Part shown: positions 2,715 through 53,468 of the stretch, piece after piece
Layout of the letters: every line of letters starts with the position of its first letter
How positions within the stretch are numbered: position 1 is the stretch's first letter
DNA from: Ranitomeya imitator
Taxonomy: Eukaryota
NCBI RefSeq assembly: GCF_032444005.1
Contig: NC_091282.1
Location: 735,816,001 to 735,880,000, forward strand
Direction: 5' to 3'
Length of the DNA: 64,000 nucleotides
Position numbers and translations under genes: made by a program
The notes under the pieces: generated by a model
The model's input: only the letters and a program-made list of their open reading frames with translations
Databases searched by the model: none
What the model was told of the DNA's origin: nothing

Positions 2715-2907
2715 NNNNNNNNNNNNNNNNNNNNNNNNNNNNNNNNNNNNNNNNNNNNNNNNNNNNNNNNNNNNNNNNNNNNNNNNNNNNNNNNNNNNNN
2801 NNNNNNNNNNNNNNNNNNNNNNNNNNNNNNNNNNNNNNNNNNNNNNNNNNNNNNNNNNNNNNNNNNNNNNNNNNNNNNNNNNNNNNNNNNNNNNNNNNNN
2901 NNNNNNN

Positions 2908-3733: not shown

Positions 3734-6540
3734 TATATAGATATATATATATATATATCATTTTCACGTTTTTATTTGATATATTTTTATTGGTAATTTT
3801 AATTTTCTTTTATTAATATCTTACAAAAACAAAACAACATATAAAGACTTGGCATCACTGTCACAACAATGTAAAAGATTATGAAAATTCACCGCACTGC
3901 GGTGAATTTTCATAATCTATGCTTAGGACCTTTGGTCCATTACACCAGCACCTCGTGATTTTTGGGCTGAGTGCACGCTAAAAATTAATTTCTACAACAA
4001 TGTAATATGCAGGTAGTTCTGTACACAGTCTACAGAGGAAAAAAAGATTTTTATTTTTTTTTCTCCCCAATGAAATTCTGCTTTTATGAAATGTTGATAC
4101 AAATTAATGTGAACATTTTCCTGGTTCCAAATAATGTCTAGAAAATCAAAATAAACAGTTACTTCTATCCAAATTCAGGGTGAAATAAACAACAAAAAAT
4201 GTGATATTCTGTGTTTTCTTTTTTCAATATATCTTTCTTGTGGTCAGAGCCATGTTTTTCTGATCCAGTGCTCCACATCCTCACCGAGGCTTAGGTACAT
4301 TGTACCTGCAGCCACCACTTGGTCTTCAGAATAATGCTGCCTATAATGAGCTCCCTCTAGTGGAGGCTGCAGGTATCCCCTCGTTCTTCAACGCTGTGTC
4401 TTGCAGAGGTTTTGGAGCTGTGTATCAGAAAAAAGACTCCAGCAGCCATAAAGCCATATTCTAAAATGAATCTGCACAGAATTTTTTAACCTTATGATAA
4501 GATAGGGATAAACTTTTTAGGGTATAAGGGGCATTTAGTTCCAAAAGTAGGTAGGTTACTCATAGGCTGTAGTTAGATTTTCCTACAGGAAGAAATTGGG
4601 CAAACGGTAGGTGGTGGTCTCTTATACTGTCATCTGGTATTCGTCTCCATTTTTTTCTGACAAGTCGTATATGAGAATAGATTTCCTGGACGCAGTGTGA
4701 ATACAGCCGGTCTTCCTACAGATATAGGGGTAGTATTACATTTCAGGTATATAAAAACCATTGAAACCTTACTTTTAGACATGGGAAAGCAGAAGTATTA
4801 CTGGTCAAGTTGATTTTTCCCCAAAACTGTTGGGTTTGGCACAGTGTGTTTCTCAGTACAATAGTCCAACCACGGACGCACCACTCTTGGAGGGGTTTTA
4901 TTGTTTGGGGGTGTCTGAGCATCGTCTATGGAAAGTGTGTAGTATAGTATTCATGAGAACAACTGGAGGAAAATGGCTGCGTGAGAAAGTGAGCAGAAAA
5001 GTGGAGAGCGTTTCGCACGGCCCCTGGCACCGATACGAATCCGGCTTCTGTGACCATTATCTGGGGCGATAAAATTTCCATTTTTTGTGTGTGCAAAATC
5101 GACAAGCTTTGAAACCTTCACAACCAGCTTGCTGATGTAGAATATATTTTTCATTGTGATGGACAAACCTTTTGGTCCACTAATTGGATGGAGCGGTCAT
5201 GTGGCTGCACTGATCAGGGAGGCGATGGCCTTCCCATTATCAGTGCAGGATTGGCGGCACCTACTGGAGTGGCGGAGGATTCAATCGGTAAGGGTTACTC
5301 TACTATTGTAATATGTTATCTAGCCCATTTACAAAAAAAATACTAGAACAACCCATTTAACTTTTTTATTCATTTATTTTTCACCCCAAAATGCTTTACA
5401 AATATTGGTATTGGGGACTTCTATAAAGAGCGATGTACCTTGCCTATATCCTGCCATTCAGGCAGAAATTTGGCCCCTATGTCCCAAATTTACCAGTTTG
5501 CTCATACAGTAGAAAAGCAGGCGTGTCTCATATATTAGTGCTCAGTAAGATCTATTGGAAAAATAAGTCAAAAGTTTTGTAAATAGTAAAAAAAACAAAA
5601 AACATTTTCGAGTTTTTTGTTGCACTCGGAAAATAAAAAAGGTACATAATGTTTCACTGGGTAGAAAACTGAGTTCCCATTTACCTTCTGGGGCAGTATG
5701 TTTTATTCGGCCGGCCCAGGGCCTGGATATTTTTTTTTTTGGTATAGGAGTCGTAAGTGGTTTCCTATGTTTCTAATTTCCACCGTCAGTAAACTTGACG
5801 TGAGAACTTGTGATGTCATAATGGCAGACTGGTGATTGAGTGCCCCCTGCAGGGCTGGGACTCAGAAGAATGACCTCTGCCTTTGCCAAAGCCAATTAGG
5901 CCATCAATCATGTCATTTATTCGCTTGGCGCTGTTTATCTAACATGTCTTGTCACTGCATGTTTTTTCCTCATTATTGGTTGTTCAGTAATTTGATAGTT
6001 TTCCATATCCAAAGGGGGTTTATAACCTTAACCTTGTTGAATCATTAGGACCCAAAATACCTTCTCTTAGGGCCTTAAAGGGTTAAAGTTGCTTCTTGTG
6101 ATATCGCACCAAACTGCGCCTGTTGTGTCGTTTTTTTCTCTCTCGCTATTGATAAATATGTTTCCTGTGTCTTTTGGGGGACAGTATGTCACTTCAAAGG
6201 GTTAATGTTATAAATGACATAGGCAAGTTTTGATCCTCTTTCTATTTTGTTTTTAAAACCCCCTGGCCATGATAATGTCATATTTGGTGGGAAGTTACTT
6301 TTTCATATTTGCCATAACCCTTGTCATCAAGTGAAATCCTGTTGTAAAGTAAAATAAAATAAAAAAATAAACTTATATGTGTATCTATGTGCATATCCTT
6401 GTGTTACTTTGATGTACAATAACAAATTGTATTGTGAAACCGTGTTAGCCAGAAAAATCGATGTGAATACTTTTCTGCCCAATGATGACAGAAGTATTCT
6501 AGGAGTGATACCTTTATTGGCTAACCATAAAATATGTTTG

Positions 6541-34890: not shown

Positions 34891-36979
34891 AAATCAGGAA
34901 CAGAGCAGATATTTATAGAACATTTCATGACTTTCCCAAATTCTAATGAAAACATTAACAGCACGTCCTGCATTGTACTACTGTACACAATTTATTATAT
35001 ATTTTAGGAGTCAGGCCATTTTATACTGACTCCACCAGAATGGACACGGACTTCCACTCCAGAGCCCTGCTTCCTATACATTGTATCTAGATTAGAATTT
35101 CTTCCTCTGCAAAGAAAGAATCCACAAATCTCTGCCCATCCAAACACTGAAATATTCCCATCTTCGCAGCCTTTGGATATGTCATAAACATGCACTAAGT
35201 ATGGGCCCTGCATCTATACAACAACGGGTCACTGATGTCCTCCACTGTCAGTGGTGAGGGGGTCCCCATAAATTCATATCAGAAATCCAACCACCTCTGC
35301 CATGAATGGGGTCCTGTTCTTGACTTGTATCTACTGTGCATTCATGGCTTTTTCTATGGAATATCCCTATACAAAAGGAGTAATATTTGTATCTCTGGTA
35401 CCAATGTGCTGGAAGTGTTTAATATCTATATGTGCAGTATAGGCAATGACCACCCAGGATCTTGGATATTCAATATACTGTAGTAACCGGTGTGTATATA
35501 TGTATTTTTCAGTTTCTGATTCCCTCTAGATAAAAAATTAGGTTGGAAATCTCCTGTTTTGCTAAGTGACGGTAATATGGACTGCAATGAACAGTACGAG
35601 GGTATGAAGACTTTATCATCTTGCTTGGAGTTTTGCTGGCTGACATAGTGAACTGCTAATTTACAGCTTGTTAAAAGCCCTCCTGGAGTGAAGAAGGCCC
35701 CCACTGAATGTTCTCCCATCTCAGTGTCAAGTCCACGTGACTGCTGCCTTAGTCATGGTTCTATTTGTGGAGTCGGCTGCAGTGGCCACGGTGTAATCCA
35801 TACTGGTCCTGCAGAGAAAGCTCTTAACGGGAATTCAGCAGACTGCGCGGTGCTTGCTGCGCACCTACCGTAGGAACGTGAAAATGCAGCACCTACTGGA
35901 GGTTCTGCAGGGCATGATGGATTCCTTGTATCTAGCAGTGCTGACCATGGAGTCTAGGCTAGGCCTAGCACAGTGTGCAGGGTGGGAGAGGAGGGACAGC
36001 TGCTGGGGGGAATATGGGAATATGACAAATGTGGAGTCAGGTGTTCCATTCGTGGGGAATGCATTTAAACGCTCCATTTCCAGAACTCCTACCAACGGAA
36101 GCTTTTCACTGCTAAAGGAATGTTTCCTGCCAGTGATATCATGGTTACCAGAAATAATCATTAACCTTTCATTACTAAAATGGAAAGCTAATGAATTCCG
36201 GAATGATTTAGGGAGAAAACCCTTCCCTACAATGTATTATGTGGGATAAAGTGATTAGGACAAGATGCACTTCAGTGTATTCTTCTAGGCTCAGGAGATT
36301 CACTTACTGAGCACTCCCTGGTACGTGGACTTCAGTCCATCAGGCGGAGATCCATGGATCCAAATTAAACTTCATTTAGTTGGAGACGACATTGATAAGA
36401 TTGGCGTTTTCCAGGTTGTTTATGGGGAAGGGGAATATACCACATAAGAGACGGACCATAGAGAAGATACTGGGTAGGAGACCGATGCATCCTGAGGAAG
36501 CTTTAATGTCGAGAAGTAAAATAGCTCTGACTGTAAGCGAGGTCCTGGACAATCCCTTTAAGAGTGGCCACAATAGTGTAATTATTTGCTCCCTTCCTTC
36601 ACGGGTAGTCCACTTCTTTTACTTTTGGTGACCTGTTCTTGGGATAGTCCCCTACACTGTCACGTTGCTACTGTGAATCAGCTCCTATTCTCTTCAATAG
36701 GAGCTGATCTGCAGCATTCAGCAGAGTCCTCTAAACAGTATACGGAGCGTTGATGCTCTGCTCCATACACTGTTTACATCTGGCTGCTGTTGGAGCTGAT
36801 CGTGGGTGGGACAGGTGTCGGACCCCCACCAATCTTATGTCGATGACCTATCCCAAGTATGGGTCATCAGTATATAAGGAGTGGAAAACCCCTTTAAACT
36901 GTATCTGTTATCAGATTTCACCAGAGTGCATACATTTACTAAATGGATCTCGTAGATCTGATGAGACTGGTGTACTTAC

Positions 36980-38024
36980 TTTAACAATTATCAGAATGGC
37001 TGGTATAATCCTTTGGCAAAATTTTCCCTTCCCAGTTGTAAAACAAATTATGAGTCCAGCTGCATATTAGTATGACATACAGCCATTCCTGCATGGATTC
37101 CCAAAGCAAGTACTCCTGCCTCATCAGGACTGAGACCTTATTAATATTGCATGCAGTGTGTATTTTGATATCTAGGAACAGATCCACTTTAAACTGACTG
37201 TAATACGACTGCATTTTGACGTTGGCAGCATAGCCATTATTCACACCACCCCTGAAGTTTCAATGTACCAAACCTGGATTAATCTTGTATTCTATCCTAA
37301 CAAATGCTCCTGTGTTATAATGGGTAATCATGTTATATGGGTTAGGTCCCCCAAACCAGTGGGGTGCTCACCAGTAATGAGGAGAAGGGGTATCAAGTCT
37401 TCTGTGTTAAAGGAGAACTCCCTGGAAATTTCTGTAAACTTGTCTAAATGTGTATATAAGGTGATTGAAATAATAAACTCCCCATCACCGTCACCTCTGG
37501 TTTCCAGCTCTGCTCCTGACCTCTTCTTAGTCACACTGGGCTTTCTGTGTGAACCGGAATTGTCTCTTATAATGTAAGTCTATGAACGGTGAGAACGAGG
37601 CTCTATAGACGGACATTGGATCAGAGACTTCCCCTTCAGACATAACCCCAATGTGAATTTAATGAGTCAAGAGGTCTGTGTTTTCTTGATTGGTGGGGAT
37701 ATTAGTGATTATATGGTTAGCCACAGGATAGATGATACATTGTGATTTCATGCCAACCCCTTTAAGAAGGACCTGTCACCTCCTGGGAAACTTAATGAAG
37801 TAAAAGGTGACCAAAATATAAAACTCATTTCAAATGTATATAATAAGGAAAACTGAAAAAAATATTTATAATTTAGTGATAACTCTAATGCTTTTAGAAA
37901 GGGAGACTGAAGTTGGACTCACTGCTGTCGAACTATTTTGACAGCTTTTTGAGTCTCCTTTGTGACAAAACACTCTGGGATCGCCTTTGCTGGGGTCAAA
38001 GGACACGTGGTTTGTGCATTGAAT
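36980..38024 (-). CDS. Tentative three-exon chain of an unidentified, possibly membrane, protein (38024-37923, 37579-37372, 37059-36980)
   Basis: AG acceptors; GTGAGT, GTGAGC and GTAAGT donors; compatible phases 0-0, 0-1, 1-0. The joined frame is open and contains hydrophobic LIPLLLITAGLIICFT. No family recognised. Confidence 0.3.
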
Positions 38025-39049
38025 CTGAGGCGTACAGCAGGTTTCTGAGCAGGCTGACCTCAGGTCAGATTTATTAACGTGAAAGCAACACAAAAAACAA
38101 AACATAAAAATAAACCCTAGCCTGTCCGGCACTAACTAAACAAATACGTTGCTATCTCAACAACTGGGGGGGCTTCTCCCACCCAGCTAACATCATACAG
38201 ATCTTGAGCAGAGCTCTTCACTCACGTTTGTCTCACACAGGCAGGCAATCTGTGTGCCCCAGGCAGACACTGGAAACACCCAGCTGGTCATCTTTTATTC
38301 CTGCAATCATTAACCCATTAGCACCCTGAAGATACTGAGTGGCCTAATTCACATAGGACAAACACCTGGGTGAGATATACCTGCCTCCATCTACCACACC
38401 AGCATGAGTCTTACACCTTGCTTGTGAACTGTGAGATACCTCTGTGACTTACAGGAGTATTCCCATCACCAAGATCCTACCCCAATATGTAGTAGATGCA
38501 ATAATAATATTAGCAAATACCTTCAAATAGAAATGTAGTATAGTTTTTTGATCCACTAAGTCTCTTTCCTCATGTGCAGGCGTTGGGTATACATGGTTAC
38601 GACCACTGATATAGCGACAGGTGTTAGTGGATATAACCATGGATACCTAAGGTCCTGCAATACCTGCACATGAAGAAAGAGGTATAGGGAATCGGAAAAA
38701 CTATACTAAATTTCTAATTGTGCCAAAAGGAGAGCAATTCAGAGCAATGATTTATAAAACAAACTTTAATTGTCATAAATAATACAAAAACATATATCAA
38801 AATATTACACTATCTAATGACTAGAGCACAGGATGAATGTCCCAGGAATGCTGGAAAAGCGCCCATCCCCCCGCTCCCCCAGATGTAAATACCCTTGTAA
38901 TGGTATGCATAAGAAAAAGCACCTACACTATCCAACCAAAGTCACCCCAAAGCAGTGGGACTCTATAGTAATGCCATTAAGTATGGTGGTGGAAAAAGGG
39001 TGCTAGCACTTACCACTACACAGAGGTAGGGGGGGCGGTCAGGCGATGG

Positions 39050-39096
39050 TCCCCAACGCACGTTTCGTGGCCACCAGTGCCACTTCCTCAGGGGGA
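39050..39096 (-). ncRNA. Type-I hammerhead ribozyme (pLTR copy 1)
   Basis: Reverse complement of 43213-43259. Confidence 0.8.
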
Positions 39097-40039
39097 TAAC
39101 CATGTACTGCCTAACGGGACCTTAAAATAGCCCTTGGCCCCGGTCACATGGTACACAGCAGCCAATCACAGTGGCGCCATCGGCACATGTGCATTGTGTC
39201 CGGCAAGTCCCAGCAGTGGAAATCAGCGTCAGACCAGGTGCGCACGCCCAGGACAAAGAAAAAAAAAAAAAAAGGTCCGGAGCGCACACACCGAGCCCTA
39301 AGACGCCGGTCCACACAGGGACAGGACGAATCACAGCGCAATGCGCACGGCCACTGGTGAGGGAAAATACTAAAAGTGCACAATATAAGTATAAAAGCTA
39401 CTCCCTCCACATCCACTACTCATAGCTGCTACCAATACAGGACAATTGGGGACCCATCAAAAATACAGCTCACAATAAAAACCGGTAAATGAACAAGTAT
39501 ACAAAGTGGAACTAAACCGTTTTCTATACATCGGCATCACATTATAGTGGAAAAAGTGCATCGCTTCAGTTTAACAGTCTTCATAGTAAGAATATTTGTC
39601 CCATTCTCTCTGAAGCAGATGTCTTGATGAGTCCACTTTGCCCCGGTTTGGATGGTATCCACGCTGGTTACTTAAATGGAGCCAAGGACATATTCAAAAG
39701 GCATACCTTAAGGCCACGGATCAATTATTATCACTAATAATGTAAATAAACCAGAGGTTAAAATCACAAACACAAACATAAAAACAAATGCTAAAACCAA
39801 AAAATCCCGAACCATACAGGGGTTAAGGACGCCCAGGGCTGGAAGGGTCATATATTTAAATACAAAAGGAGGCAGAGGATGACACCTTGGCACACACACA
39901 AATAAGCAATAAATAATAAGGAGTACAAAGGGTACCAGGGATTCCCAGCCAGTCTCCCATGCTGGTCCCTGCCTAGCCTAAAGCTGCTTAGCATTCTGAC
40001 GAGGGCAGGCACATTCTGCTTAGTGTGGCCGTTAAGTAC

Positions 40040-42931
40040 TCATAAGTAGGGAGCAAAGCTCAGAGCCTCATTCAGACCCGCTGGTGACATAGTACCAAGT
40101 CTAACTATCCACCTAGTTTCCTTTTGTGCTAGAAGTTTTTTATTGTCCCCACCCCGAATACCCAAGTGCAAGGCATCAATACCCCTCACCTTTAATAGAT
40201 TTGCATTGCACTTATGGTGCCGCAAAAAATGTCGTGGAATGGGTTTCAGATCTGACGTGTCGGTCACTGTCTTGGCAGCACCAATGTCCCGGACATGCTC
40301 ACGGACACGGACTCTCAGCTCCCGTGTGGTAAGACCTATGTAAATCATGGGACACGGGCATGTCGCATAGTAGATTATATTGGTTGTGCCGCATGAAATC
40401 CGTTCCCTGATGTCAAATTCTCTCGTTCCATCAGTAGAAGTGAAACTAGAGCATCGTAGGACATTGGTGCAGGCAAGACAGTGACCGCAGGGGAAACACC
40501 CCAAAGTGGGGCCCCTCGAACCAAATGGGTTACTCGGACTGGGGACATAGTGGCTACGCACCAGCAGGTCATTCAAATTTTTGCATCTCCTAGAGGTCAT
40601 CTGAGGGTATGGGCCAAGGGAGGCCGCCAGAGAGGGCTCAGCCCCAAGAACTGACCAGTGCTTGGCAAGGATGGAGCGCATCCCATTCCACTCATGATTG
40701 TACGTAGAAATAAAGCGAATGGTGCCAGCCCCATCCCTGCCAATCTGCCGGTCACGTGGATGCAGTAGAGTCTCACGTGGGGTCTTTCTGGCACGATCAT
40801 AACCATGTTTTATGGATCGCCGGCTATACCCCCGAGCCAAAAATCGGTCCCTGAGATCAGAGGCCTGTGCCTCAAACTTTGACTCAGAGGAACAGATTCG
40901 CCGCATCCTCAGGAATTGTCCGATCGGGACGGCCCTAACCGTGGACGGATCATGTGCCGATGAGGCATGCAACAGTGCGTTAACAGAGGTCGACTTCCTG
41001 AAGACATCCGCCTGGATGCGACGATGGTTGTCGATCTCAAGACGGACGTCCAGAAAGTCGACCGCGACCTCACTGTAAACATGCGTAAGTTTAATATTAA
41101 GAGTGTTGTTATTCACAGCACCCATAAAGTCCTGGAGCTGCTGGACAGTCCCATCCCACAAAAAAAGAATATCATCAATGAAGCGATACCAGCACAGCAC
41201 ATGGGACGCGGCCGGTGGGCCCTCGTCGCCAAAAAGGAATCTCTCCCAATAACCAAGGAAGAGATTAGCATACGAAGGCGCACAGGCCGCGCCCATGGCT
41301 GTGCCGCGCTTCTGTAAATAAAAAACGTCTTTAAAGACGAAAAAATTATGTGTGAGAACAAAGTCCAGCAGCTCAAGTACCAATCCACGTACAGGGCCGC
41401 CCAGATCGGAAGTCCCGAGGAAGAAGCGAACCGCCTCCAACCCACAAGAGTGTTCTATACAAGTATACAACCCTTCAACGTCAGCAGTGACGAGAAGGGT
41501 TGCTTTGTCCACAAGGATGCCGTCAACCCGCGCTAGGACATCCGTGGTGTCACGAATATAAGAAGGTAATGTCTGGACTAGTGGCTTCAGATAGAAATCA
41601 ATAAATTGACACACACGGTCACATAAACCCCCAATCCCAGACACAATCGGACGTCCCGGGGGGTTGAGGGCATCCTTGTGGACTTTGGGCAACAAATAAA
41701 AAGTAGGAGTTCTGGGGGATCTGACCATCAAACCATCGAAGACCTTTTTGGGGATAATACCCCCCTCAAAAGCTCCAAATAGAACCTGCTCTAACTCCCG
41801 CAGGTATATCACCATCGGATTGGAGGACAACCTAATGTAGGTGTCAGAGTTCCGGAGCTGGCGAAATGCCTCACGCTCATATTTATCACTTGGCCAGACC
41901 ACAATGTTCCCCCCCTTGTCCGCAGGCTTGAATACAACATCCCGCAATGATTGAAGCTGCCCGATAGCCTGCCGTTGTTTAGCGGTTAAGTTATCATAAG
42001 TACGCCTAGTAGACAGTTTTTTGAAATCCTCACTAACCAATCTAGTGAATACTTCGATTGCCGGGCTTAAGGACAAGGGGGGGAACCTTGTGGACCTGGG
42101 CAGGATAGAAGACGGAAAACTACTTACATTAGGACACTCCTGTTCCTCCAATAAGTCCTCCAAATCACGAAGTGCTTGTGCTTCAACTGCACTCATGGAC
42201 TCTGATGTAGGATCCCTTCCATGCAGTTTTCTCAAAATCAATTTGCGGGAAAAGAGATGCAGGTCCTTTAGGGCTGTAAAATAGTCAAATGAATTTGTTG
42301 GAGAGAAAGTCAGACCCCTACTCAGAACATCCAACTGAGACTCAGTAAGTGCATGTGATGATAAGTTCAATACCTGGAGTCCACCCTGGCGACCACCCCG
42401 GGCCGTAGTTCCCCCAGCTCCCTTATTCCTGGTGTGTTGCCTGGTAGTCATCCTCTTATTGCCGGACTCAGACATTGAAACCTGTTCAGACTGAGAAGTG
42501 CTGGACCTGGCATCTTCCTCATGGTTGGATCTGCCAGAAAATGCTGAAGTGGATCTCGACCGGGAATAAGACATGTTCCTCGACCTTGGTCGAGAACGAC
42601 CCCATGGGTTCCGCCATCTATATACTCTAGACTGCTGTTTGTCCAGAATATCACGGTTAAATTTTTTTGTTTTAGTTGTTTGAATGTCATGGGCCCACTT
42701 CTGCAAGTCGGCATCAATTTCTTCATTTAGTTTTTTTAGGGCATCACTTGACATATCCTTCTGCAGGCACACCTGTAACTCATCAATCTCCTTCTCAATT
42801 ACTTCCAGAGATTCATGGTTCAACCGTTTAAGCAGAACCATGAACCCAAATGGGTCCCCAATTGTCCTGTATTGGTAGCAGCTATGAGTAGTGGATGTGG
42901 AGGGAGTAGCTTTTATACTTATATTGTGCAC
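40040..42931 (-). CDS. Uninterrupted 963-aa PLE polyprotein (RT + Cys linker + GIY-YIG endonuclease) with a chimeric N-terminus
   Basis: KPADKGG, GTAMGAACAPSYANLF, YRFIDD, CFPCGHCLAC and IIYYATCPCPMIYIGLT motifs. The first ~28 aa are read from antisense pLTR sequence across the 42848-49 junction. Confidence 0.9.
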   Translation of the reverse strand: MHNISIKATPSTSTTHSCYQYRTIGDPFGFMVLLKRLNHESLEVIEKEIDELQVCLQKDMSSDALKKLNEEIDADLQKWAHDIQTTKTKKFNRDILDKQQSRVYRWRNPWGRSRPRSRNMSYSRSRSTSAFSGRSNHEEDARSSTSQSEQVSMSESGNKRMTTRQHTRNKGAGGTTARGGRQGGLQVLNLSSHALTESQLDVLSRGLTFSPTNSFDYFTALKDLHLFSRKLILRKLHGRDPTSESMSAVEAQALRDLEDLLEEQECPNVSSFPSSILPRSTRFPPLSLSPAIEVFTRLVSEDFKKLSTRRTYDNLTAKQRQAIGQLQSLRDVVFKPADKGGNIVVWPSDKYEREAFRQLRNSDTYIRLSSNPMVIYLRELEQVLFGAFEGGIIPKKVFDGLMVRSPRTPTFYLLPKVHKDALNPPGRPIVSGIGGLCDRVCQFIDFYLKPLVQTLPSYIRDTTDVLARVDGILVDKATLLVTADVEGLYTCIEHSCGLEAVRFFLGTSDLGGPVRGLVLELLDFVLTHNFFVFKDVFYLQKRGTAMGAACAPSYANLFLGYWERFLFGDEGPPAASHVLCWYRFIDDILFLWDGTVQQLQDFMGAVNNNTLNIKLTHVYSEVAVDFLDVRLEIDNHRRIQADVFRKSTSVNALLHASSAHDPSTVRAVPIGQFLRMRRICSSESKFEAQASDLRDRFLARGYSRRSIKHGYDRARKTPRETLLHPRDRQIGRDGAGTIRFISTYNHEWNGMRSILAKHWSVLGAEPSLAASLGPYPQMTSRRCKNLNDLLVRSHYVPSPSNPFGSRGPTLGCFPCGHCLACTNVLRCSSFTSTDGTREFDIRERISCGTTNIIYYATCPCPMIYIGLTTRELRVRVREHVRDIGAAKTVTDTSDLKPIPRHFLRHHKCNANLLKVRGIDALHLGIRGGDNKKLLAQKETRWIVRLGTMSPAGLNEALSFAPYL

Positions 42932-43212
42932 TTTTAGTATTTTCCCTCACCAGTGGCCGTGCGCATTGCGCTGTGATTCGTCCTGTCCCTGTGTGGACCG
43001 GCGTCTTAGGGCTCGGTGTGTGCGCTCCGGACTTTTTTTTTTTTTTTTTTCTTTGTCCTGGGCGTGCGCACCTGGTCTGACGCTGATTTCCACTGCTGGG
43101 ACTTGCCGGACACAATGCACATGTGCCGATGGCGCCACTGTGATTGGCTGCTGTGTACCATGTGACCGGGGCCAAGGGCTATTTTAAGGTCCTATTAGGC
43201 AGTACATGGTTA

Positions 43213-43259
43213 TCCCCCTGAGGAAGTGGCACTGGTGGCCACGAAACGTGCGTTGGGGA
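43213..43259 (+). ncRNA. Type-I hammerhead ribozyme (pLTR copy 2)
   Basis: TCCCC-CTGAGGA-A-GTGGC(actggtg)GCCAC-GAAA-CGTGCG-TT-GGGGA: stem I TCCCC/GGGGA, stem II GTGGC/GCCAC, minimal stem III, GUU triplet ending at 43254. Confidence 0.8.
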
Positions 43260-43295
43260 CCATCGCCTGACCGCCCCCCCTACCTCTGTGTAGTG

Positions 43296-43724
43296 GTAAG
43301 TGCTAGCACCCTTTTTCCACCACCATACTTAATGGCATTACTATAGAGTCCCACTGCTTTGGGGTGACTTTGGTTGGATAGTGTAGGTGCTTTTTCTTAT
43401 GCATACCATTACAAGGGTATTTACATCTGGGGGAGCGGGGGGATGGGCGCTTTTCCAGCATTCCTGGGACATTCATCCTGTGCTCTAGTCATTAGATAGT
43501 GTAATATTTTGATATATGTTTTTGTATTATTTATGACAATTAAAGTTTGTTTTATAAATCATTGCTCTGAATTGCTCTCCTTTTGGCATGGTTTGTTTTG
43601 AGCTGATTTGGTGAGGTCGGGGTCTTTTGGCGTATTTACTGCCAGACCCCGTGCGCTCACAATATGTATTTGGGAGTTTTGTATTCAATATTCTCTGTGT
43701 TTTTCACAGCTTTCCCATTCTTAG
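43296..43724 (+). other. Predicted spliceosomal intron in the PLE 5' leader
   Basis: G|GTAAGT donor at 43296. Pyrimidine tract and TTAG acceptor at 43724 (alternative CAG at 43709), immediately followed by GC-ATG-G (MDFRAL). Confidence 0.6.
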
Positions 43725-43726
43725 GC

Positions 43727-46700
43727 ATGGACTTCCGTGCGCTTGACTGCACCTGGCGAGCACAGATTAATGATGTCTGTCTTGACAATGCTGACGGGGT
43801 GGTTGAGGGGTCCTCCAAAGAGTTGCAGGAGGTGGTACATCGTTTTAAGGAACTTTTACGTAAGAGGACTCGGACATGGTGGAACCATGAGTTCCTGGAT
43901 ATGTATATCCAGAAGGACCTTATCCCACGTGGGCTTCGTATCCAAGTGTTTCCGTCATTCCCTATCTTGGATGACAAGTTTAAAAATGATTGGGAGGAAT
44001 TGACTAATACCTGCTCCAGGGGGTTCATGGTTCTGCTTAAACGGTTGAACCATGAATCTCTGGAAGTAATTGAGAAGGAGATTGATGAGTTACAGGTGTG
44101 CCTGCAGAAGGATATGTCAAGTGATGCCCTAAAAAAACTAAATGAAGAAATTGATGCCGACTTGCAGAAGTGGGCCCATGACATTCAAACAACTAAAACA
44201 AAAAAATTTAACCGTGATATTCTGGACAAACAGCAGTCTAGAGTATATAGATGGCGGAACCCATGGGGTCGTTCTCGACCAAGGTCGAGGAACATGTCTT
44301 ATTCCCGGTCGAGATCCACTTCAGCATTTTCTGGCAGATCCAACCATGAGGAAGATGCCAGGTCCAGCACTTCTCAGTCTGAACAGGTTTCAATGTCTGA
44401 GTCCGGCAATAAGAGGATGACTACCAGGCAACACACCAGGAATAAGGGAGCTGGGGGAACTACGGCCCGGGGTGGTCGCCAGGGTGGACTCCAGGTATTG
44501 AACTTATCATCACATGCACTTACTGAGTCTCAGTTGGATGTTCTGAGTAGGGGTCTGACTTTCTCTCCAACAAATTCATTTGACTATTTTACAGCCCTAA
44601 AGGACCTGCATCTCTTTTCCCGCAAATTGATTTTGAGAAAACTGCATGGAAGGGATCCTACATCAGAGTCCATGAGTGCAGTTGAAGCACAAGCACTTCG
44701 TGATTTGGAGGACTTATTGGAGGAACAGGAGTGTCCTAATGTAAGTAGTTTTCCGTCTTCTATCCTGCCCAGGTCCACAAGGTTCCCCCCTTGTCCTTAA
44801 GCCCGGCAATCGAAGTATTCACTAGATTGGTTAGTGAGGATTTCAAAAAACTGTCTACTAGGCGTACTTATGATAACTTAACCGCTAAACAACGGCAGGC
44901 TATCGGGCAGCTTCAATCATTGCGGGATGTTGTATTCAAGCCTGCGGACAAGGGGGGGAACATTGTGGTCTGGCCAAGTGATAAATATGAGCGTGAGGCA
45001 TTTCGCCAGCTCCGGAACTCTGACACCTACATTAGGTTGTCCTCCAATCCGATGGTGATATACCTGCGGGAGTTAGAGCAGGTTCTATTTGGAGCTTTTG
45101 AGGGGGGTATTATCCCCAAAAAGGTCTTCGATGGTTTGATGGTCAGATCCCCCAGAACTCCTACTTTTTATTTGTTGCCCAAAGTCCACAAGGATGCCCT
45201 CAACCCCCCGGGACGTCCGATTGTGTCTGGGATTGGGGGTTTATGTGACCGTGTGTGTCAATTTATTGATTTCTATCTGAAGCCCCTAGTCCAGACATTA
45301 CCTTCTTATATTCGTGACACCACGGATGTCCTAGCGCGGGTTGACGGCATCCTTGTGGACAAAGCAACCCTTCTCGTCACTGCTGACGTTGAAGGGTTGT
45401 ATACTTGTATAGAACACTCTTGTGGGTTGGAGGCGGTTCGCTTCTTCCTCGGGACTTCCGATCTGGGCGGCCCTGTACGTGGATTGGTACTTGAGCTGCT
45501 GGACTTTGTTCTCACACATAATTTTTTCGTCTTTAAAGACGTTTTTTATTTACAGAAGCGCGGCACAGCCATGGGCGCGGCCTGTGCGCCTTCGTATGCT
45601 AATCTCTTCCTTGGTTATTGGGAGAGATTCCTTTTTGGCGACGAGGGCCCACCGGCCGCGTCCCATGTGCTGTGCTGGTATCGCTTCATTGATGATATTC
45701 TTTTTTTGTGGGATGGGACTGTCCAGCAGCTCCAGGACTTTATGGGTGCTGTGAATAACAACACTCTTAATATTAAACTTACGCATGTTTACAGTGAGGT
45801 CGCGGTCGACTTTCTGGACGTCCGTCTTGAGATCGACAACCATCGTCGCATCCAGGCGGATGTCTTCAGGAAGTCGACCTCTGTTAACGCACTGTTGCAT
45901 GCCTCATCGGCACATGATCCGTCCACGGTTAGGGCCGTCCCGATCGGACAATTCCTGAGGATGCGGCGAATCTGTTCCTCTGAGTCAAAGTTTGAGGCAC
46001 AGGCCTCTGATCTCAGGGACCGATTTTTGGCTCGGGGGTATAGCCGGCGATCCATAAAACATGGTTATGATCGTGCCAGAAAGACCCCACGTGAGACTCT
46101 ACTGCATCCACGTGACCGGCAGATTGGCAGGGATGGGGCTGGCACCATTCGCTTTATTTCTACGTACAATCATGAGTGGAATGGGATGCGCTCCATCCTT
46201 GCCAAGCACTGGTCAGTTCTTGGGGCTGAGCCCTCTCTGGCGGCCTCCCTTGGCCCATACCCTCAGATGACCTCTAGGAGATGCAAAAATTTGAATGACC
46301 TGCTGGTGCGTAGCCACTATGTCCCCAGTCCGAGTAACCCATTTGGTTCGAGGGGCCCCACTTTGGGGTGTTTCCCCTGCGGTCACTGTCTTGCCTGCAC
46401 CAATGTCCTACGATGCTCTAGTTTCACTTCTACTGATGGAACGAGAGAATTTGACATCAGGGAACGGATTTCATGCGGCACAACCAATATAATCTACTAT
46501 GCGACATGCCCGTGTCCCATGATTTACATAGGTCTTACCACACGGGAGCTGAGAGTCCGTGTCCGTGAGCATGTCCGGGACATTGGTGCTGCCAAGACAG
46601 TGTCCGACACGTCAGATCTGAAACCCATTCCACGACATTTTTTGCGGCACCATAAGTGCAATGCAAATCTATTAAAGGTGAGGGGTATTGATGCCTTGCA

Positions 46701-46827
46701 CTTGGGTATTCGGGGTGGGGACAATAAAAAACTTCTAGCACAAAAGGAAACTAGGTGGATAGTTAGACTTGGTACTATGTCACCAGCGGGTCTGAATGAG
46801 GCTCTGAGCTTTGCTCCCTACTTATGA
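43727..46827 (+). CDS. Full-length PLE ORF (~1030 aa) broken by one 1-bp homopolymer frameshift at 44785-44790
   Basis: ORFs 43664-44800 and 44791-46827 join if C6 is read as C7, as in the inverted copy (G7 at 42077-42083). N-terminal IPRGLR motif, RT and GIY-YIG. Confidence 0.9.
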
Positions 46828-47777
46828 GTACTTAACGGCCACACTAAGCAGAATGTGCCTGCCCTCGTCAGAATGCTAAGCAGCTTTAGGCTAGGCAGGG
46901 ACCAGCATGGGAGACTGGCTGGGAATCCCTGGTACCCTTTGTACTCCTTATTATTTATTCCTTATTTGTGTGTGTGCCAAGGTGTCATCCTCTGCCTCCT
47001 TTTGTATTTAAATATATGACCCTTCCAGCCCTGGGCGTCCTTAACCCCTGTATGGTTCGGGATTTTTTGGTTTTAGCATTTGTTTTTATGTTTGTGTTTG
47101 TGATTTTAACCTCTGGTTTATTTACATTATTAGTGATAATAATTGATCCGTGGCCTTAAGGTATGCCTTTTGAATATGTCCTTGGCTCCATTTAAGTAAC
47201 CAGCGTGGATACCATCCAAACCGGGGCAAAGTGGACTCATCAAGACATCTGCTTCAGAGAGAATGGGACAAATATTCTTACTATGAAGACTGTTAAACTG
47301 AAGCGATGCACTTTTTCCACTATAATGTGATGCCGATGTATAGAAAACGGTTTAGTTCCACTTTGTATACTTGTTCATTTACCGGTTTTTATTGTGAGCT
47401 GTATTTTTGATGGGTCCCCAATTGTCCTGTATTGGTAGCAGCTATGAGTAGTGGATGTGGAGGGAGTAGCTTTTATACTTATATTGTGCACTTTTAGTAT
47501 TTTCCCTCACCAGTGGCCGTGCGCATTGCGCTGTGATTCGTCCTGTCCCTGTGTGGACCGGCGTCTTAGGGCTCGGTGTGTGCGCTCCGGACCTTTTTTT
47601 TTTTTTTTTTTTTTTCTTTGTCCTGGGCGTGCGCACCTGGTCTGACGCTGATTTCCACTGCTGGGACTTGCCGGACACAATGCACATGTGCCGATGGCGC
47701 CACTGTGATTGGCTGCTGTGTACCATGTGACCGGGGCCAAGGGCTATTTTAAGGTCCTGTTAGGCAGTACATGGTTA

Positions 47778-47824
47778 TCCCCCTGAGGAAGTGGCACTGG
47801 TGGCCACGAAACGTGCGTTGGGGA
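47778..47824 (+). ncRNA. Type-I hammerhead ribozyme (pLTR copy 3)
   Basis: Identical to 43213-43259. Confidence 0.8.
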
Positions 47825-48430
47825 CCATCGCCTGACCGCCCCCGCTACCTCTGTGTAGTGGTAAGTGCTAGCACCCTTTTTCCACCACCATACTTAATGG
47901 CATTACTATAGAGTCCCACTGCTTTGGGGTGACTTTGGTTGGATAGTGTAGGTGCTTTTTCTTATGCATACCATTACAAGGGTATTTACATCTGGGGGAG
48001 CGGGGGGATGGGCGCTTTTCCAGCATTCCTGGGACATTCATCCTGTGCTCTAGTCATTAGATAGTGTAATATTTTGATATATATTTTTTTGTATTATTTA
48101 TGACAATTAAAGTTTGTTTTATAAATCATTGCTCTGAATTGCTCTCCTTTTGGCATGGTTTGTTTTGAGCTGATTTGGTGAGGTCGGGGTCTTTTGGCGT
48201 ATTTACTGCCAGACCCCGTGCGCTCACAATATGTATTTGGGAGTTTTGTATTAAATTTCTAATTGGAGGTATTTGCTAAAATTATTATTACACCTACTAC
48301 ATATTGGGATAGGATCTTGCCATTGGGAATACATTTTTTAATGCTGGATGCAGTTTTGTAAGATGGAATCCTGTGTAATATGGAGCAGCAGGAGGAGGCT
48401 AGAAACAGCCAAATGTTTTCTTAAATAGTA

Positions 48431-48907
48431 AATTATGCAAATTGTCTCTTCAGAGAGGAAGAGAGCTAGAACTCTAGTGCCACCTATTGGAAGGTAGCAA
48501 TCCTACAAGTCAATGTCGACCCTTTAACGAGCCTTGTCACATGACTTAGGATAATAACCAAACCAGAATCTCAAATAATCCCACCTTCCAATAGGTGGCA
48601 CTAGAGTTCTAGCTCTCTTCCTCTCTGAAGAGACAATTTGCATAATTAGTATATTACCCAGAGGAGCATTGCGGCTTTAAGTCTCCTCATCTCGGCATGC
48701 TTAGCATGTCGATCTCCGCAAGGAGAAACGATACTTCTTGGATAACGATCTGAAGCCTCTCACACAGCCAAACCAGATCTCCACTTTGCACTGACGAGGG
48801 GCAGTACCCCGAAACACAGTGGCTGCAAATTGAGATTCTGGTTTGGCTATTATCCTAAGTCATGTGACAAGGCTCATTAAAGGGTCGACATTGACTTGTA
48901 GGATTGC
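48431..48907. mobile_element. Retrozyme-like non-autonomous PLE derivative (~325-nt unit 48583-48907 plus inverted piece 48431-48574)
   Basis: A-B-A'-M-B' inverted-repeat layout with a hammerhead motif in M. Confidence 0.7.
48785..48829 (+). ncRNA. Type-I hammerhead motif with a mutated cleavage triplet
   Basis: TTTGCA-CTGACGA-GGGG(cagta)CCCC-GAAA-CACAGTG-GC-TGCAAA. The triplet reads GGC rather than GUC. Confidence 0.7.
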
Positions 48908-49321
48908 GAAACGCGCGTCGGGTGTGGTGGGTCCTTCGTTTGCTCCTCCATAGGTAACTATGCCTTATTCACATTATCTGCGATGTATATGTTAGCTGCT
49001 TAAACATCTATTGTTCGCCCTCACTATGACCAAATAGTGTTGTTTTACTAAATTAACTATTTATATTGGTATAATTATAATTATCATATTGCACATTTGC
49101 ACTATTCTCACTATTTGCATATGTGGGGCGATTTTTCTATGCAGCTGGTTATTGAGTATACAGTGGGGCAAAAAAGTATTTAGTCAGTCAGCAATAGTGC
49201 AAGTTCCACCACTTAAAAAGATGAGAGGCGTCTGTAATTTACATCATAGGTAGACCTCAACTATGGAAGACAAACTGAGAAAAAAAAATCCAGAAAATCA
49301 CATTGTCTTTTTTTTAACATT

Positions 49322-49852
49322 TTATTTGCATATTATGGTGGAAAATAAGTATTTGGTCAGAAACAAAATTTCATCTGAATACTTTGTAATATATCCTTTG
49401 TTGGCAATGACAGAGGACAAATGTTTTCTGTAAGTCTTCACAAGGTTGCCACACACTGTTGTTGGTATGTTGGCCCATTCCTCCATGCAGATCTCCTCTA
49501 GAGCAGTGATGTTTTTGGCTTTTCGCTTGGCAACACGGACTTTCAACTCCCTCCAAAGGTTTTCTATAGGGTTGAGATCTGGAGACTGGCTAGGCCACTC
49601 CAGGACCTTGAAATGCTTCTTACGAAGCCACTCCTTCGTTGCCCTGGCGGTGTGCTTTGGATCATTGTCATGTTGAAAGACCCAGCCACGTTTCATCTTC
49701 AATGCCCTTGCTGATGGAAGGAGGTTTGCACTCAAAATCTCACGATACATGGCCCCATTCATTCTTTCATGTACCCGGATCAGTCGTCCTGGCCCCTTTG
49801 CAGAGAAACAGCCCCAAAGCATGATGTTTCCACCACCATGCTTTACAGTAGG
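49322..49852 (-). CDS. Tc1 transposase, C-terminal half (DD34E domain)
   Basis: [15 protein letters not shown]...HDNDPKH...[11 protein letters not shown], with 34 residues between D and E. Confidence 0.9.
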
Positions 49853-49957
49853 TAACATAGTAACATAGTTAGTAAGGCCGAAAAAAGACATTTGTCCATC
49901 CAGTTCAGCCTATATTCCATCATAATAAATACCCAGATCTACGTCCTTCTACAGAAC

Positions 49958-52900
49958 CTAATAATTGTATGATACAATATTGTTCTGCTCCAGGAAGACA
50001 TCCAGGCCTCTCTTGAACCCCTCGACTGAGTTTGCCATCACCACCTCCTCAGGCAAGCAATTCCAGATTCTCACTGCCCTAACAGTAAAGAATCCTCTTC
50101 TATGTTGGTGGAAAAACCTTCTCTCCTCCAGACGCAAAGAATGCCCCCTTGTGCCCGTCACCTTCCTTGGTATAAACAGATCCTCAGCGAGATATTTGTA
50201 TTGTCCCCTTATATACTTATACATGGTTATTAGATCGCCCCTCAGTCGTCTTTTTTCTAGACTAAATAATCCTAATTTCGCTAATCTATCTGGGTATTGT
50301 AGTTCTCCCATCCCCTTTATTAATTTTGTTGCCCTCCTTTGTACTCTCTCTAGTTCCATTATATCCTTCCTGAGCACCGGTGCCCAAAACTGGACACAGT
50401 ACTCCATGTGCGGTCTAACTAGGGATTTGTACAGAGGCAGTATAATGCTCTCATCATGTGTATCCAGACCTCTTTTAATGCACCCCATGATCCTGTTTGC
50501 CTTGGCAGCTGCTGCCTGGCACTGGCTGCTCCAGGTAAGTTTATCATTAACTAGGATCCCCAAGTCCTTCTCCCTGTCAGATTTACCCAGTGGTTTCCCG
50601 TTCAGTGTGTAATGGTGATATTGATTCCCTCTTCCCATGTGTATAACCTTACATTTATCATTGTTAAACCTCATCTGCCACCTTTCAGCCCAAGTTTCCA
50701 ACTTATCCAGATCCATCTGTAGCAGAATACTATCTTCTCTTGTATTAACTGCTTTACATAGTTTTGTATCATCTGCAAATATCGATATTTTACTGTGTAA
50801 ACCTTCTACCAGATCATTAATGAATATGTTGAAGAGAACAGGTCCCAATACTGACCCCTGCGGTACCCCACTGGTCACAGCGACCCAGTTTTGAGACTAT
50901 ACCATTTATAACCACCCTCTGCTTTCTATCACTAAGCCAGTTACTAACCCATTTACACACATTTTCCCCCAGACCAAGCATTCTCATTTTGTGTACCAAC
51001 CTCTTGTGCGGCACGGTATCAAACGCTTTGGAAAAATCGAGATATACCACGTCCAATGACTCACCGTGGTCCAGCCTATAGCTTACCTCTTCATAAAAAC
51101 TGATTAGATTGGTTTGACAGGAGCGATTTCTCATAAACCCATGCTGATATGGAGTTAAACAGTTATTCTCATTGAGATAATCCAGAATAACATCCCTCAG
51201 AAACCCTTCAAATATTTTACCAACAATAGAGGTTAGACTTACTGGCCTATAATTTCCAGGTTCACTTTTAGAGCCCTTTTTGAATATTGGCACCACATTT
51301 GCTATGCGCCAGTCCTGCGGAACAGACCCTGTCGCTATAGAGTCACTAAAAATAAGAAATAATGGTTTATCTATTACATTACTTAAGGTACCTTCACACA
51401 TAACGATATTGTTAACGATATCGTTGCTATTTGTGACGTAGCAACGATATCGTTAATGAAATCGTTATGTGTGACAGCGACCAACGATCAGGCCCCTGCT
51501 GGGAGATCGTTGGTCGCTGAATAAAGTCCAGAACTTTATTTCGTCGCTGGACTTCCTGCTGACATCGCTGGATCGGCGTGTGTGACACCGATCCAGCGAT
51601 GTCTTCACTGGTAACCAGGGTAAACATCGGGTAACTAAGCGCAGGGCCGCGCTTAGTAACCCGATGTTTACCCTGGTTACCATGCTAAAAGTAAAAAAAA
51701 ACAAACAGTACATACTTACCTACAGCTGTCTGTCCTCCAGCGCTGCGCTCTGCTCTCCTCCTGTACTGGCTGTGAGCCGGAAAGCAGAGCGGTGACGTCA
51801 CCGCTCTGCTTTCCGGCTCCCAGACAGTACAGGAGGAGTGCAGAGAAGCAGAGCGCAGCGCTGGAGGACAGACGGCTGTAGGTAAGTATGTAGTGTTTGT
51901 TTTTTTTTACTTTTAGCATGGTAACCAGGGTAAACATCGGGTTACTAAGCGCGGCCCTGTGCTTAGTTACCCGATGTTTACCCTGGTTACCGGCATCGTT
52001 GGTCGCTGGAGAGCGGTCTGTGTGACAGCTCTCCAGCGACCAAACAGCGACGCTGCAGCGATCCGGATCGTTGTCGGTATCGCTGCAGCGTCGCTAAATG
52101 TGAAGGGGCCTTTAGTTCTCTTAGTACTCGTGGGTGTATGCCATCCGGACCCGGAGATTTATCTATTTTAATCTTATTTAGCCGGTTTCGCACCTCTTCT
52201 TGGGTTAGATTGGTGACCCTTAATATAGGGTTTTCATTGTTTCTTGGGATTTCACCTAGCATTTCATTTTCCACCGTGAATACCGTGGAGAAGAAGGTGT
52301 TTAATATGTTAGCTTTTTCCTCGTCATCTACAACCATTCTTTCCTCACTATTTTTTAAGGGGCCTACATTTTCAGTTTTTATTCTTTTACTATTGATATA
52401 GTTGAAGAACAGTTTGGGATTAGTTTTACTCTCCTTAGCAATGTGCTTCTCTGTTTCCTTTTTGGCAGCTTTAATTAGTTTTTTAGATAAAGTATTTTTC
52501 TCCCTATAGTTTTTTAGAGCTTCAATGGTGCCATCCTGCTTTAGTAGTGCAAATGCTTTCTTTTTACTGTTAATTGCCTGTCTTACTTCTTTGTTTAGCC
52601 ACATTGGGTTTTTCCTATTTCTAGTCCTTTTATTCCCACAAGGTATAAACCGCTTACACTGCCTATTTAGGATGTTCTTAAACATTTTCCATTTATTATC
52701 TGTATTCTTATTTCTGAGGATATTGTCCCAGTCTACCAGATTAAGGGCATCTCTAAGCTGGTCAAACTTTGCCTTCCTAAAGTTCAGTGTTTTTGTGACT
52801 CCCTGACAAGTCCCCTTAGTGAAAGACAGGTGAAACTGCACAATATTGTGGTCGCTATTTCCTAAATGCCCAACCACCTGCAGATTTGTTATTCTGTCAG

Positions 52901-53468
52901 GTCTATTAGATAGTATTAGGTCTAAAAGTGCTGCTCCTCTGGTTGGATTCTGCACCAATTGTGAAAGATAATTTTTCTTGGTTATTAGCAGAAACCTGTT
53001 GCCTTTATGGGTTTCACAGGTTTCTGTTTCCCAGTTAATATCCGGGTAGTTAAAGTCCCCCATAACCAGGACCTCATTATGGGTTGCAGCTTCATCTATC
53101 TGCTTTAGAAGTAGACTTTCCATGCTTTCTGTTATATTTGGGGGTTTGTAACAGACCCCAATGAGAATTTTGTTACCATTTTTCCCTCCATGAATTTCAA
53201 CCCATATGGACTCGACATCCTCATTCCCTTCGCTAATATCCTCCCTTAAAGTGGACTTTAGACAAGACTTTACATAGAGACAAACCCCTCCTCCTCTCCG
53301 ATTTTTACGATCCTTTCTAAACAGACTGTAACCCTGTAAGTTAACTGCCCAGTCATAGCTTTCATCTAACCATGTCTCGGTTATTCCCACTATGTCAAAG
53401 TTACCTGTAGATATTTCTGCTTCTAGTTCTTCCATCTTGTTTGTCAGGCTTCTGGCGTTTGCGAGCAT
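49958..53468 (-). pseudogene. CR1 ORF2 (APE endonuclease + RT), interrupted by a MITE and one frameshift near 50890
   Basis: [53 protein letters not shown]. Confidence 0.92.
51386..52111. mobile_element. PIF/Harbinger-type MITE inside CR1 ORF2
   Basis: 3-bp TTA TSD (51383-85, 52112-14) and TIRs AGGTACCTTCACAC / ATGTGAAGGGGCCT. Removing it restores ...RVLREL-SNVIDKP... in frame. Confidence 0.85.

What the first reader, a model, noticed from the sequence alone, without database searches (positions are those of the whole stretch)
38707..48265. One insertion event produced a 9.5-kb head-to-head Penelope-like dimer with 4.1-kb inverted arms
Seen: 38721-42847 is the near-exact reverse complement of 44021-48155. 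The whole structure is bounded by one 14-bp direct repeat (TAAATTTCTAATTG), and removing it rejoins the two arms of a foldback MITE. The inversion junction at 42848-49 has two untemplated A's. Established: PLEs often integrate as partial tandems with an inverted 5'-truncated segment. Inference: here the inverted segment is nearly a whole coding copy, so a read-through transcript could fold into a ~4-kb dsRNA hairpin (a possible siRNA/piRNA or ADAR source) and the DNA is cruciform-prone.
Basis: partly seen in the sequence, partly recalled or inferred. Interest (0 to 1): 0.85.

Follow-up and report, generated by a model that had tools for sequence, protein, structure and literature searches.

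The report
Head-to-head Penelope-like retrotransposon insertion in a frog
A 9.5-kb block is one young insertion of a Penelope-like retrotransposon in the inverted-copy-plus-partial-tandem layout already described for this class; it is a very clean example, not a new kind of thing.

Summary
38721-42847 is the reverse complement of 44021-48155 (99.6%, 4.1 kb). Two filler A's sit at 42848-49. One 14-bp repeat, TAAATTTCTAATTG, bounds the block. Removing the block and one repeat copy restores a foldback element whose pairing runs in register across the join.

42850-43685 is a direct copy of the unit's last 836 nt (a pseudo-LTR). The layout is therefore inverted 0.90 unit, AA, 0.18 unit, then one full 4567-nt unit.

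The element meets the Penelope-like (PLE) criteria at motif level: RT, Neptune/Nematis-type Cys linker, GIY-YIG with internal Cys pair, and three identical type-I hammerheads. A 97-nt tail is present at only one outer end.

This is the published typical PLE structure. It fits in vitro evidence that a PLE protein cuts and extends both target strands from two internal RT start sites.

Three private substitutions in each arm fit a single event.

The dsRNA/siRNA idea has a Drosophila Penelope precedent but is untested here. No RNA-like contig crossed the inversion junction.

Short-read contigs could not confirm the junctions independently.

Unchecked notes from this scan report other long head-to-head PLE dimers on other DNA of the same genome.

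The parts
38457..38720 (.). Left part of the target: a foldback (MITE-like) element. It holds the left arm, the loop and the first 20 nt of the right arm.
   Evidence: Inverted repeat 38457-38540 / 48249-48332; continuous hairpin in the in-silico empty site.
38707..38720 (.). Left copy of the 14-bp target-site duplication, TAAATTTCTAATTG.
38721..42847 (-). Arm A: inverted copy covering unit positions 336-4470. It lacks the first 335 nt and the last 97 nt (the 'tail') of the unit.
   Evidence: 99.61% identity to the reverse complement of 44021-48155.
39049..39097 (-). Hammerhead ribozyme motif of arm A.
   Evidence: Exact reverse complement of 47777-47825.
39924..40036 (-). 5S-rRNA-like segment of arm A.
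   Evidence: Rfam 5S_rRNA, 33.3 bits against a gathering score of 38.
40040..42931 (-). Open 963-codon frame on arm A (RT, Cys linker, GIY-YIG). Codons upstream of 42847 come from the junction and from antisense pseudo-LTR sequence.
42848..42849 (.). Two filler A's at the inversion junction.
   Evidence: They match neither neighbour's continuation.
42850..43685 (+). Part B: pseudo-LTR, a direct copy of unit positions 3725-4567. It includes a hammerhead at 43212-43260 and the 97-nt tail at 43589-43685.
   Evidence: 98.8% identity to 47410-48252.
43686..48252 (+). Part C: the full 4567-nt unit.
   Evidence: The tandem junction at 43685/43686 and the 3' junction with the TSD define its ends.
43664..46827 (+). 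Coding region of C. It is split into 378 and 678 codons by one missing C in a C run at 44785. The first in-frame ATG (43664) lies in the tail of B; the next is at 43727.
   Evidence: Arm A and one run X27 contig (RNA-guessed) carry the extra C.
46831..46943 (+). 5S-rRNA-like segment, 3 nt after the stop codon.
   Evidence: In DNA contigs this segment is far deeper than the rest of the element.
47777..47825 (+). Type-I hammerhead motif of C. Predicted cut is after GUU, at 47819|47820.
   Evidence: Rfam Hammerhead_1, 22.4 bits (gathering score 34), E 0.0076 in a 651-nt search.
48156..48252 (+). 97-nt 'tail', present at the 3' end of C and of B but absent from A. It holds a stable hairpin at 48178-48227.
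   Evidence: Contigs of other copies stop at 48155/6 and at 48252/3.
48252..48265 (.). Right copy of the TSD. Its first T could also be the last base of the unit.
48266..48332 (.). Rest of the right arm of the foldback target.

Best explanation
This is one integration event of a young frog Penelope-like element (Neptune/Nematis-type by its linker motif) into a foldback repeat.

Shown:
- A staggered 14-bp target duplication bounds the block.
- An inverted 0.90-unit copy abuts the left target copy by its 3'-proximal end.
- Two filler A's follow, then a 0.18-unit pseudo-LTR, then a full unit whose 3' end abuts the right target copy.
- The 97-nt tail is at the right outer end only.
- The arms diverge equally from the family.

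Inferred mechanism:
- The GIY-YIG endonuclease nicked both strands 14 bp apart. Each nick lies 1-2 nt 3' of an AATT.
- Each 3'-OH primed reverse transcription.
- The bottom strand started at the unit's end and copied 1.18 units of a longer-than-unit RNA.
- The top strand started 97 nt further in, at unit position 4470, and copied back to position 336, giving the inverted arm.
- The two cDNA ends were then joined, with AA added.
- Together the cDNAs hold 2.09 units, so the template was a multimeric RNA or two RNAs.

No function is implied. A 4.1-kb RNA hairpin would form only if an outside transcript ran through both arms.
For: Anatomy.

The empty site refolds in register.

PLE identity:
- The RT FIDD motif, the CFPCGHCLAC linker and IIYYATCPCPMIYIG are visible.
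- Pfam gives weak RVT_1 and GIY-YIG hits.
- 122 homologues were found, the best of them from frogs and at most 71% identical; many are named RT- or GIY-YIG-domain proteins.
- A hammerhead is present.

Single-event evidence: there are three private substitutions each in A and C and one in B. They were polarised against family contigs.

Sibling copies end at both 48155/6 and 48252/3.

Literature:
- The typical PLE insert is two direct pseudo-LTRs plus an adjacent inverted copy, one TSD, and a tail at one end (PMC3846280, PMC8557442).
- A purified PLE protein cleaves and extends both strands. It starts RT at two internal sites that delimit the tail, on multi-copy RNA, and prefers ATT in AT-rich DNA (PMC11167929).
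Against: - No independent molecule spanning the junctions was seen. The contigs collapse the family.
- The tail is 97 nt, against the published 30-40 nt.
- Five of seven substitutions are transversions. That is odd for germline mutation and could reflect RT or assembly-consensus errors, so the age estimate is soft.
- A's tail matches B rather than C at three sites. The 3:1:1 split of private changes is not significant (my estimate, p about 0.6), so one-RNA and two-RNA templates cannot be told apart.
- The promoter position is assumed from Penelope and was not mapped here.
Confidence: 0.72

Rival explanations
1. Single event, but the inverted arm arose by self-priming (snap-back) of a cDNA or an antisense template, as proposed for rotifer Penelope, rather than by priming from the second target strand.
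For: PMC3846280 proposes self-priming to explain head-to-head repeats with palindromes at the inversion junction.
Against: - There is no palindrome at this junction. The arms are offset by 1173 nt, their inner ends are at unrelated unit positions (336 and 3725), and two filler A's lie between them.
- The outer end of A sits exactly at the TSD and at a terminus that recurs in the family. That is what target priming predicts.
Confidence: 0.12
2. Two steps: a normal pseudo-LTR-plus-unit insertion, followed later by an inverted duplication, a recombination event or a second nested insertion.
For: Long inverted duplications can arise by replication template switching. The family is abundant.
Against: - A second insertion would carry its own TSD around A, and none is there.
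- A duplication breakpoint would have to fall exactly at the TSD edge and also at the recurrent 48155 terminus.
- A and C have equal numbers of private changes.
Confidence: 0.08
3. Assembly artefact: a false foldback join of reads from different family copies.
For: - PLE tandem/inverted structures are known to trouble assemblies (PMC8557442).
- The indels between arms are in homopolymers, and the substitutions are rich in transversions.
- The junctions were not seen in contigs.
Against: - The false arm would have to start exactly at a TSD whose removal restores an in-register hairpin.
- The structure is asymmetric, has filler bases, and has private variants in each arm. A missed-adapter palindrome would not look like this.
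- It matches the published PLE layout.
Confidence: 0.07

Closest known systems
Canonical EN+ Penelope-like elements (Neptune, Nematis and Penelope/Poseidon clades) with complex tandem/inverted insertions
   Same: [quoted passage not shown] It forms a pseudo-LTR by partial tandem, with a hammerhead in the pseudo-LTR. An inverted 5'-truncated copy lies next to the upstream pseudo-LTR. One TSD surrounds the whole insert, a tail is present at one end only, and the target is AT-rich (PMC8557442, PMC3846280).
   Different: The inverted piece is 0.90 of a unit and includes almost the whole ORF, rather than just a pseudo-LTR. The tail is 97 nt, not 30-40. A 5S-rRNA-like segment sits in the 3' UTR.
PAc (Poseidon of Anolis carolinensis) in vitro integration system, PMC11167929
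   Same: It predicts what is seen here: both target strands are cut and extended, there are two RT start sites whose interval is the tail, the template RNA is multi-copy, and cuts fall next to ATT in AT-rich DNA.
   Different: It belongs to a different clade, since Poseidon lacks the CX2-5CxxC linker. The start sites there are tens of nt apart and lie near the ORF start. Nothing was tested biochemically here.
LINE-1 twin priming (inversion with 5' truncation)
   Same: The geometry is the same: the second nicked strand primes internally on the RNA, so an inverted segment lies at the element's 5' side within one TSD.
   Different: In L1 the two segments come from one RNA and together do not exceed one unit. 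Here they overlap almost completely and sum to 2.09 units.
Rearranged Penelope copies with long inverted repeats that give siRNAs in transformed Drosophila melanogaster (PMC3681739)
   Same: Long inverted Penelope repeats are proposed there as a source of dsRNA, and the observed siRNAs match the inverted regions.
   Different: No small-RNA or stranded RNA data were available for this locus, and the host is a vertebrate.

Membership tests
Penelope-like element (EN+) | PLE-type reverse transcriptase | tested here: met
   Pfam RVT_1 scores only 20.2 bits against a cut-off of 29.6. The FIDD active-site motif is visible. 122 homologues at E<=1e-10 carry RVT_1, DUF8422 and HTH_animal, several also GIY-YIG, and many are named RT-domain proteins.
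Penelope-like element (EN+) | C-terminal GIY-YIG endonuclease with two Cys between GIY and YIG (CCHH) | tested here: met
   IIYYATCPCPMIYIG is visible. Pfam GIY-YIG gives E 0.023 and 15.4 bits, below the 22.6 cut-off. The feature is met at motif level only.
Penelope-like element (EN+) | Pseudo-LTR formed by a partial tandem copy | tested here: met
   42850-43685 equals 47410-48252 at 98.8% and lies directly upstream of the unit start.
Penelope-like element (EN+) | Hammerhead ribozyme motif in the pseudo-LTR | tested here: met
   Hammerhead_1 scores 22.4 bits, below the gathering score of 34, with E 0.0076. CUGANGA and GAAA are present. There are three identical copies. [quoted passage not shown] Cleavage was not tested.
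Penelope-like element (EN+) | Inverted 5'-truncated copy next to the upstream pseudo-LTR, one TSD around the whole insert, tail at one end only | tested here: met
Penelope-like element (EN+) | Retained spliceosomal intron | tested here: inconclusive
   GT at 43300 and AG at 43709 look like splice sites. No spliced contig was listed; the contigs run unspliced through 43256-43691.
Neptune/Nematis-type PLE | CX2-5CxxC Zn-finger-like linker upstream of GIY-YIG | tested here: met
   CFPCGHCLAC is visible. The criterion comes from PMC8557442. No RT phylogeny was made, so the clade is not assigned.
L1-style twin priming | Inverted and direct segments copied from one unit-length RNA, with little or no overlap | tested here: not met
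   The segments overlap over 4.1 kb and sum to 2.09 units. It works like twin priming but needs multimeric RNA or two RNAs.

The most novel reading that the evidence does not exclude
This locus could be a natural in vivo record of symmetric PLE integration, taken together with the sibling copy whose pseudo-LTR starts 1-3 nt after the predicted hammerhead cut and with the other long head-to-head dimers noted in this genome. On that reading, both nicked target strands prime reverse transcription, from two start sites 97 nt apart, on multimeric RNA that is sometimes ribozyme-processed. So far this has been shown only in vitro for one lizard element.
Probability: 0.4. Interest if true: 0.5.

Novelty: new member of a known kind. 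Interest (0 to 1): 0.3.

Why it matters
The PLE transposition cycle is still poorly understood. Clean, young insertions with both junctions, a verifiable empty site and an asymmetric tail are useful test cases for the model in which both strands are cut and extended.

A genome-wide tally of such dimers in this frog could show three things: how often the second strand primes, where RT starts, and whether templates are ribozyme-cut.

As a single locus it is an ordinary, though tidy, example. The proposed dsRNA role would repeat what was reported for Drosophila Penelope.

Tried and rejected
- DNA contigs. Logan contigs of four runs from four coded organisms were laid on 38400-44399. They represent the collapsed family. 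The apparent 'opposite strand' joints at 42847/44020 and 39035/43274 are just the normal continuous unit placed on two copies. Nothing covers 42848-43199 because those contigs were placed on the duplicate. The locus is neither confirmed nor refuted.
- RNA-like contigs. Four runs were laid on 42500-48400. None crossed the inversion junction and there was no A>G excess. Contigs carry no strand and drop rare variants, so this is uninformative for the hairpin and ADAR ideas.
- Exact-protein look-up. It found no record for arm A's ORF. It gave no DNA for the best homologue because the file was too large. Sibling loci could therefore not be surveyed.
- Shared RNA segment. I tested whether A's tail and B were copied from the same RNA segment, since they share three states against C. 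The 3:1:1 split of private changes is not significant, so I dropped this as evidence.
- Spurious hits. The mir-BART21 hit at 38580-38653 is the loop hairpin of the foldback target. The bacterial-type promoter scan is irrelevant in a eukaryote.
- Repeats. No tandem repeats lie in 36000-51000, and no other copy of the family is in the window.
- Host gene. None was found near the insert. The large neighbouring ORFs tested gave only transposon-type Pfam hits or none.

Full report
**Observation.**
A self-comparison of 38000-49000 gives three long matches.
- 38721-42847 matches the reverse complement of 44021-48155 (4136 columns, 99.61%).
- 42850-43694 matches 47410-48260 in direct orientation (98.6%).
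- 38721-39457 matches the reverse complement of 42850-43588 (99.3%).

The repeat finder gives the same picture. It also finds the repeat TAAATTTCTAATTG at 38707-38720 and 48252-48265.

Letter by letter, the block reads as follows:
- left TSD copy;
- arm A (38721-42847, minus orientation, unit positions 336-4470);
- two filler A's (42848-49) that match neither neighbour's continuation;
- part B (42850-43685, unit positions 3725-4567);
- part C (43686-48252, the full 4567-nt unit);
- right TSD copy.

A, B and C together hold 2.09 units. No other copy of the family lies in the window.

**Empty site.**
I joined 38440-38720 to 48266-48350 in silico. The result folds as one long hairpin (-184.7 kcal/mol). 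Pairing continues without a register shift across the join: 38720 pairs with 38524 and 48266 pairs with 38523.

So the whole 9.53 kb, plus one repeat copy, is an insertion into a foldback repeat.

**What the element is.**
Arm A carries an open 963-codon frame at 40040-42931 on the minus strand.
- Pfam gives only weak RVT_1 (20 bits) and GIY-YIG (15 bits) hits.
- The translation shows the RT FIDD motif and a CFPCGHCLAC linker. It also shows IIYYATCPCPMIYIG, that is, GIY and YIG motifs with two cysteines between them.
- By the criteria in PMC8557442 this is a canonical EN+ PLE endonuclease with the extra linker of the Neptune/Nematis clades. I made no phylogeny, so I do not assign a clade.
- A homologue search found 122 proteins, the best of them from frogs and at most 71% identical. 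Many are named RT-, HTH- or GIY-YIG-domain proteins.

A type-I hammerhead motif lies at 47777-47825 (22.4 bits, below Rfam's gathering score of 34). Identical copies lie at 43212-43260 and, inverted, at 39049-39097. Its short self-complementary helix III and its bulged base before helix II are the traits of PLE hammerheads in PMC4209133.

In unit C the frame is split at 44785 by one missing C in a C run. Arm A and one contig of run X27 (RNA-guessed) carry the extra C.

**The tail.**
Arm A stops at unit position 4470. B and C both continue for 97 nt more (48156-48252 in C), and this stretch holds a stable hairpin (z = -3.1).

Contigs of sibling copies stop at 48155/6 and at 48252/3 and then continue into unrelated flanks. 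So both termini recur in the family.

PLE insertions are known to carry an optional tail at only one end (PMC3846280, PMC8557442). In vitro, a lizard PLE protein cleaves and extends both target strands. It starts reverse transcription at two internal sites whose interval is the tail, probably on multi-copy RNA, and it prefers ATT in AT-rich DNA (PMC11167929).

At this locus the two inferred nicks each lie 1-2 nt 3' of an AATT. Each resulting 3' end abuts the 3'-proximal end of an element copy. That is the geometry expected if both strands primed.

**One event?**
I polarised each difference against family contigs.
- A has three private substitutions.
- C has three private substitutions plus two indels.
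- B has one private substitution.

This equal divergence (about 0.07% per arm) fits a simultaneous origin.

A nested second insertion would need its own TSD around A, and there is none. A later inverted duplication would need a breakpoint exactly at the TSD edge and at the recurrent 48155 terminus.

A snap-back origin predicts a palindromic junction (PMC3846280). Here the inner ends are at unrelated positions (336 and 3725) with filler bases between them.

Five of the seven substitutions are transversions and the indels are in simple runs. Some differences may therefore be RT or consensus errors, and I give no firm age.

**Artefact?**
I could not test this on independent molecules. All available runs are Logan contigs, which collapse this abundant family.

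The TSD, the in-register empty site, the asymmetry, the filler bases and the private variants all argue against a false foldback join. I put the probability of an artefact at about 0.07.

**Function.**
A transcript through both arms would fold into a 4.1-kb stem with a 1.17-kb loop.

Nothing seen here shows that such a transcript exists. No RNA-like contig crosses 42848, and there is no A>G excess. Both results are weak, because contigs carry no strand and drop rare variants.

By analogy with Penelope, where the pseudo-LTR holds the transcription start (PMC8557442), B would drive C rightwards. A's own pseudo-LTR would fire leftwards out of the element. A hairpin would therefore need read-through from outside.

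The neighbourhood is transposon-rich and no host gene was seen. A Tc1-like DDE_3 ORF lies at 49322-49891 and a LINE with endonuclease and RT lies at 49958-53468.

The idea that inverted Penelope copies feed siRNA production is already published for Drosophila (PMC3681739).

**Comparison and verdict.**
The structure is the typical PLE insert. What stands out is a long inverted arm (0.90 unit), a long tail (97 nt) and a very clean target.

Unchecked notes from this scan list further long head-to-head PLE dimers on other DNA of the same genome. If they are correct, this is the family's usual outcome.

I rate it a new member of a known kind. It is useful mainly as one data point for the model in which both strands are primed.

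Noticed in passing
window 43254-43258 and 45792-46024 (a sibling copy seen in runs X22, X26, X31): A 546-nt contig in X22 and X31 (depth about 100) joins antisense body 46024->45792 to sense pseudo-LTR starting at 43256 (+/-2); a deep X26 contig shows the same joint with only 25 nt on one side. That start is 1-3 nt after the predicted hammerhead cut. Another copy therefore has an inverted arm fused to a pseudo-LTR that begins at a ribozyme-processed 5' end. PMC11167929 reported finding no reads at the cut site in Anolis.
   Followed up: partly
window 46831-46943 (+) and 39924-40036 (-): A 113-nt 5S-rRNA-like segment (33.3 bits, gathering score 38) sits 3 nt after the ORF stop. In DNA contigs the bin that holds it reaches depth about 50,000 in X1, against a few hundred to about 2,000 in most bins over the rest of the element. 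The deep copies diverge at its 3' end into T runs. It looks like a separate, abundant 5S-derived family, a piece of which sits in the PLE 3' UTR.
   Followed up: partly
window 44491-44592: RNA-like contigs of X22 and X31 skip exactly 100 nt with GT..AG ends inside the N-terminal coding region. This is either a spliced form or a deletion variant of the family, and it would shift the frame.
   Followed up: no
window 43300-43709: A candidate intron (GTAAGT ... TTTTTCACAG) spans the pseudo-LTR/unit junction, upstream of the ATG at 43727. Another in-frame ATG at 43664 lies in the tail of B. No spliced contig was listed.
   Followed up: partly
window 38721-48252: Five of the seven substitutions among A, B and C are transversions, and all indels are in simple runs. 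This is unusual for germline mutation. It may reflect RT errors at insertion or assembly-consensus errors.
   Followed up: partly
window 48431-48907: Just right of the insertion lie nested inverted repeats: 48431-48495 / 48583-48647 (100%) and 48497-48574 / 48830-48907 (97%). Another scan note calls this a retrozyme-like unit.
   Followed up: no
window 38400-44400 (runs X3-X20): Runs labelled as several different organisms hold 8-62% of the sampled 31-mers of this stretch. So near-identical copies of this PLE family, and/or of the foldback repeat, occur in several organisms.
   Followed up: no
window 43686-43700 versus 48253-48265: The first bases of the unit (TCAATATTCT...) resemble the target (TAAATTTCT...). 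Contigs of X22 and X31 continue from 43691 into (AT)n. This may reflect target preference or carried-over flank from a master copy.
   Followed up: no
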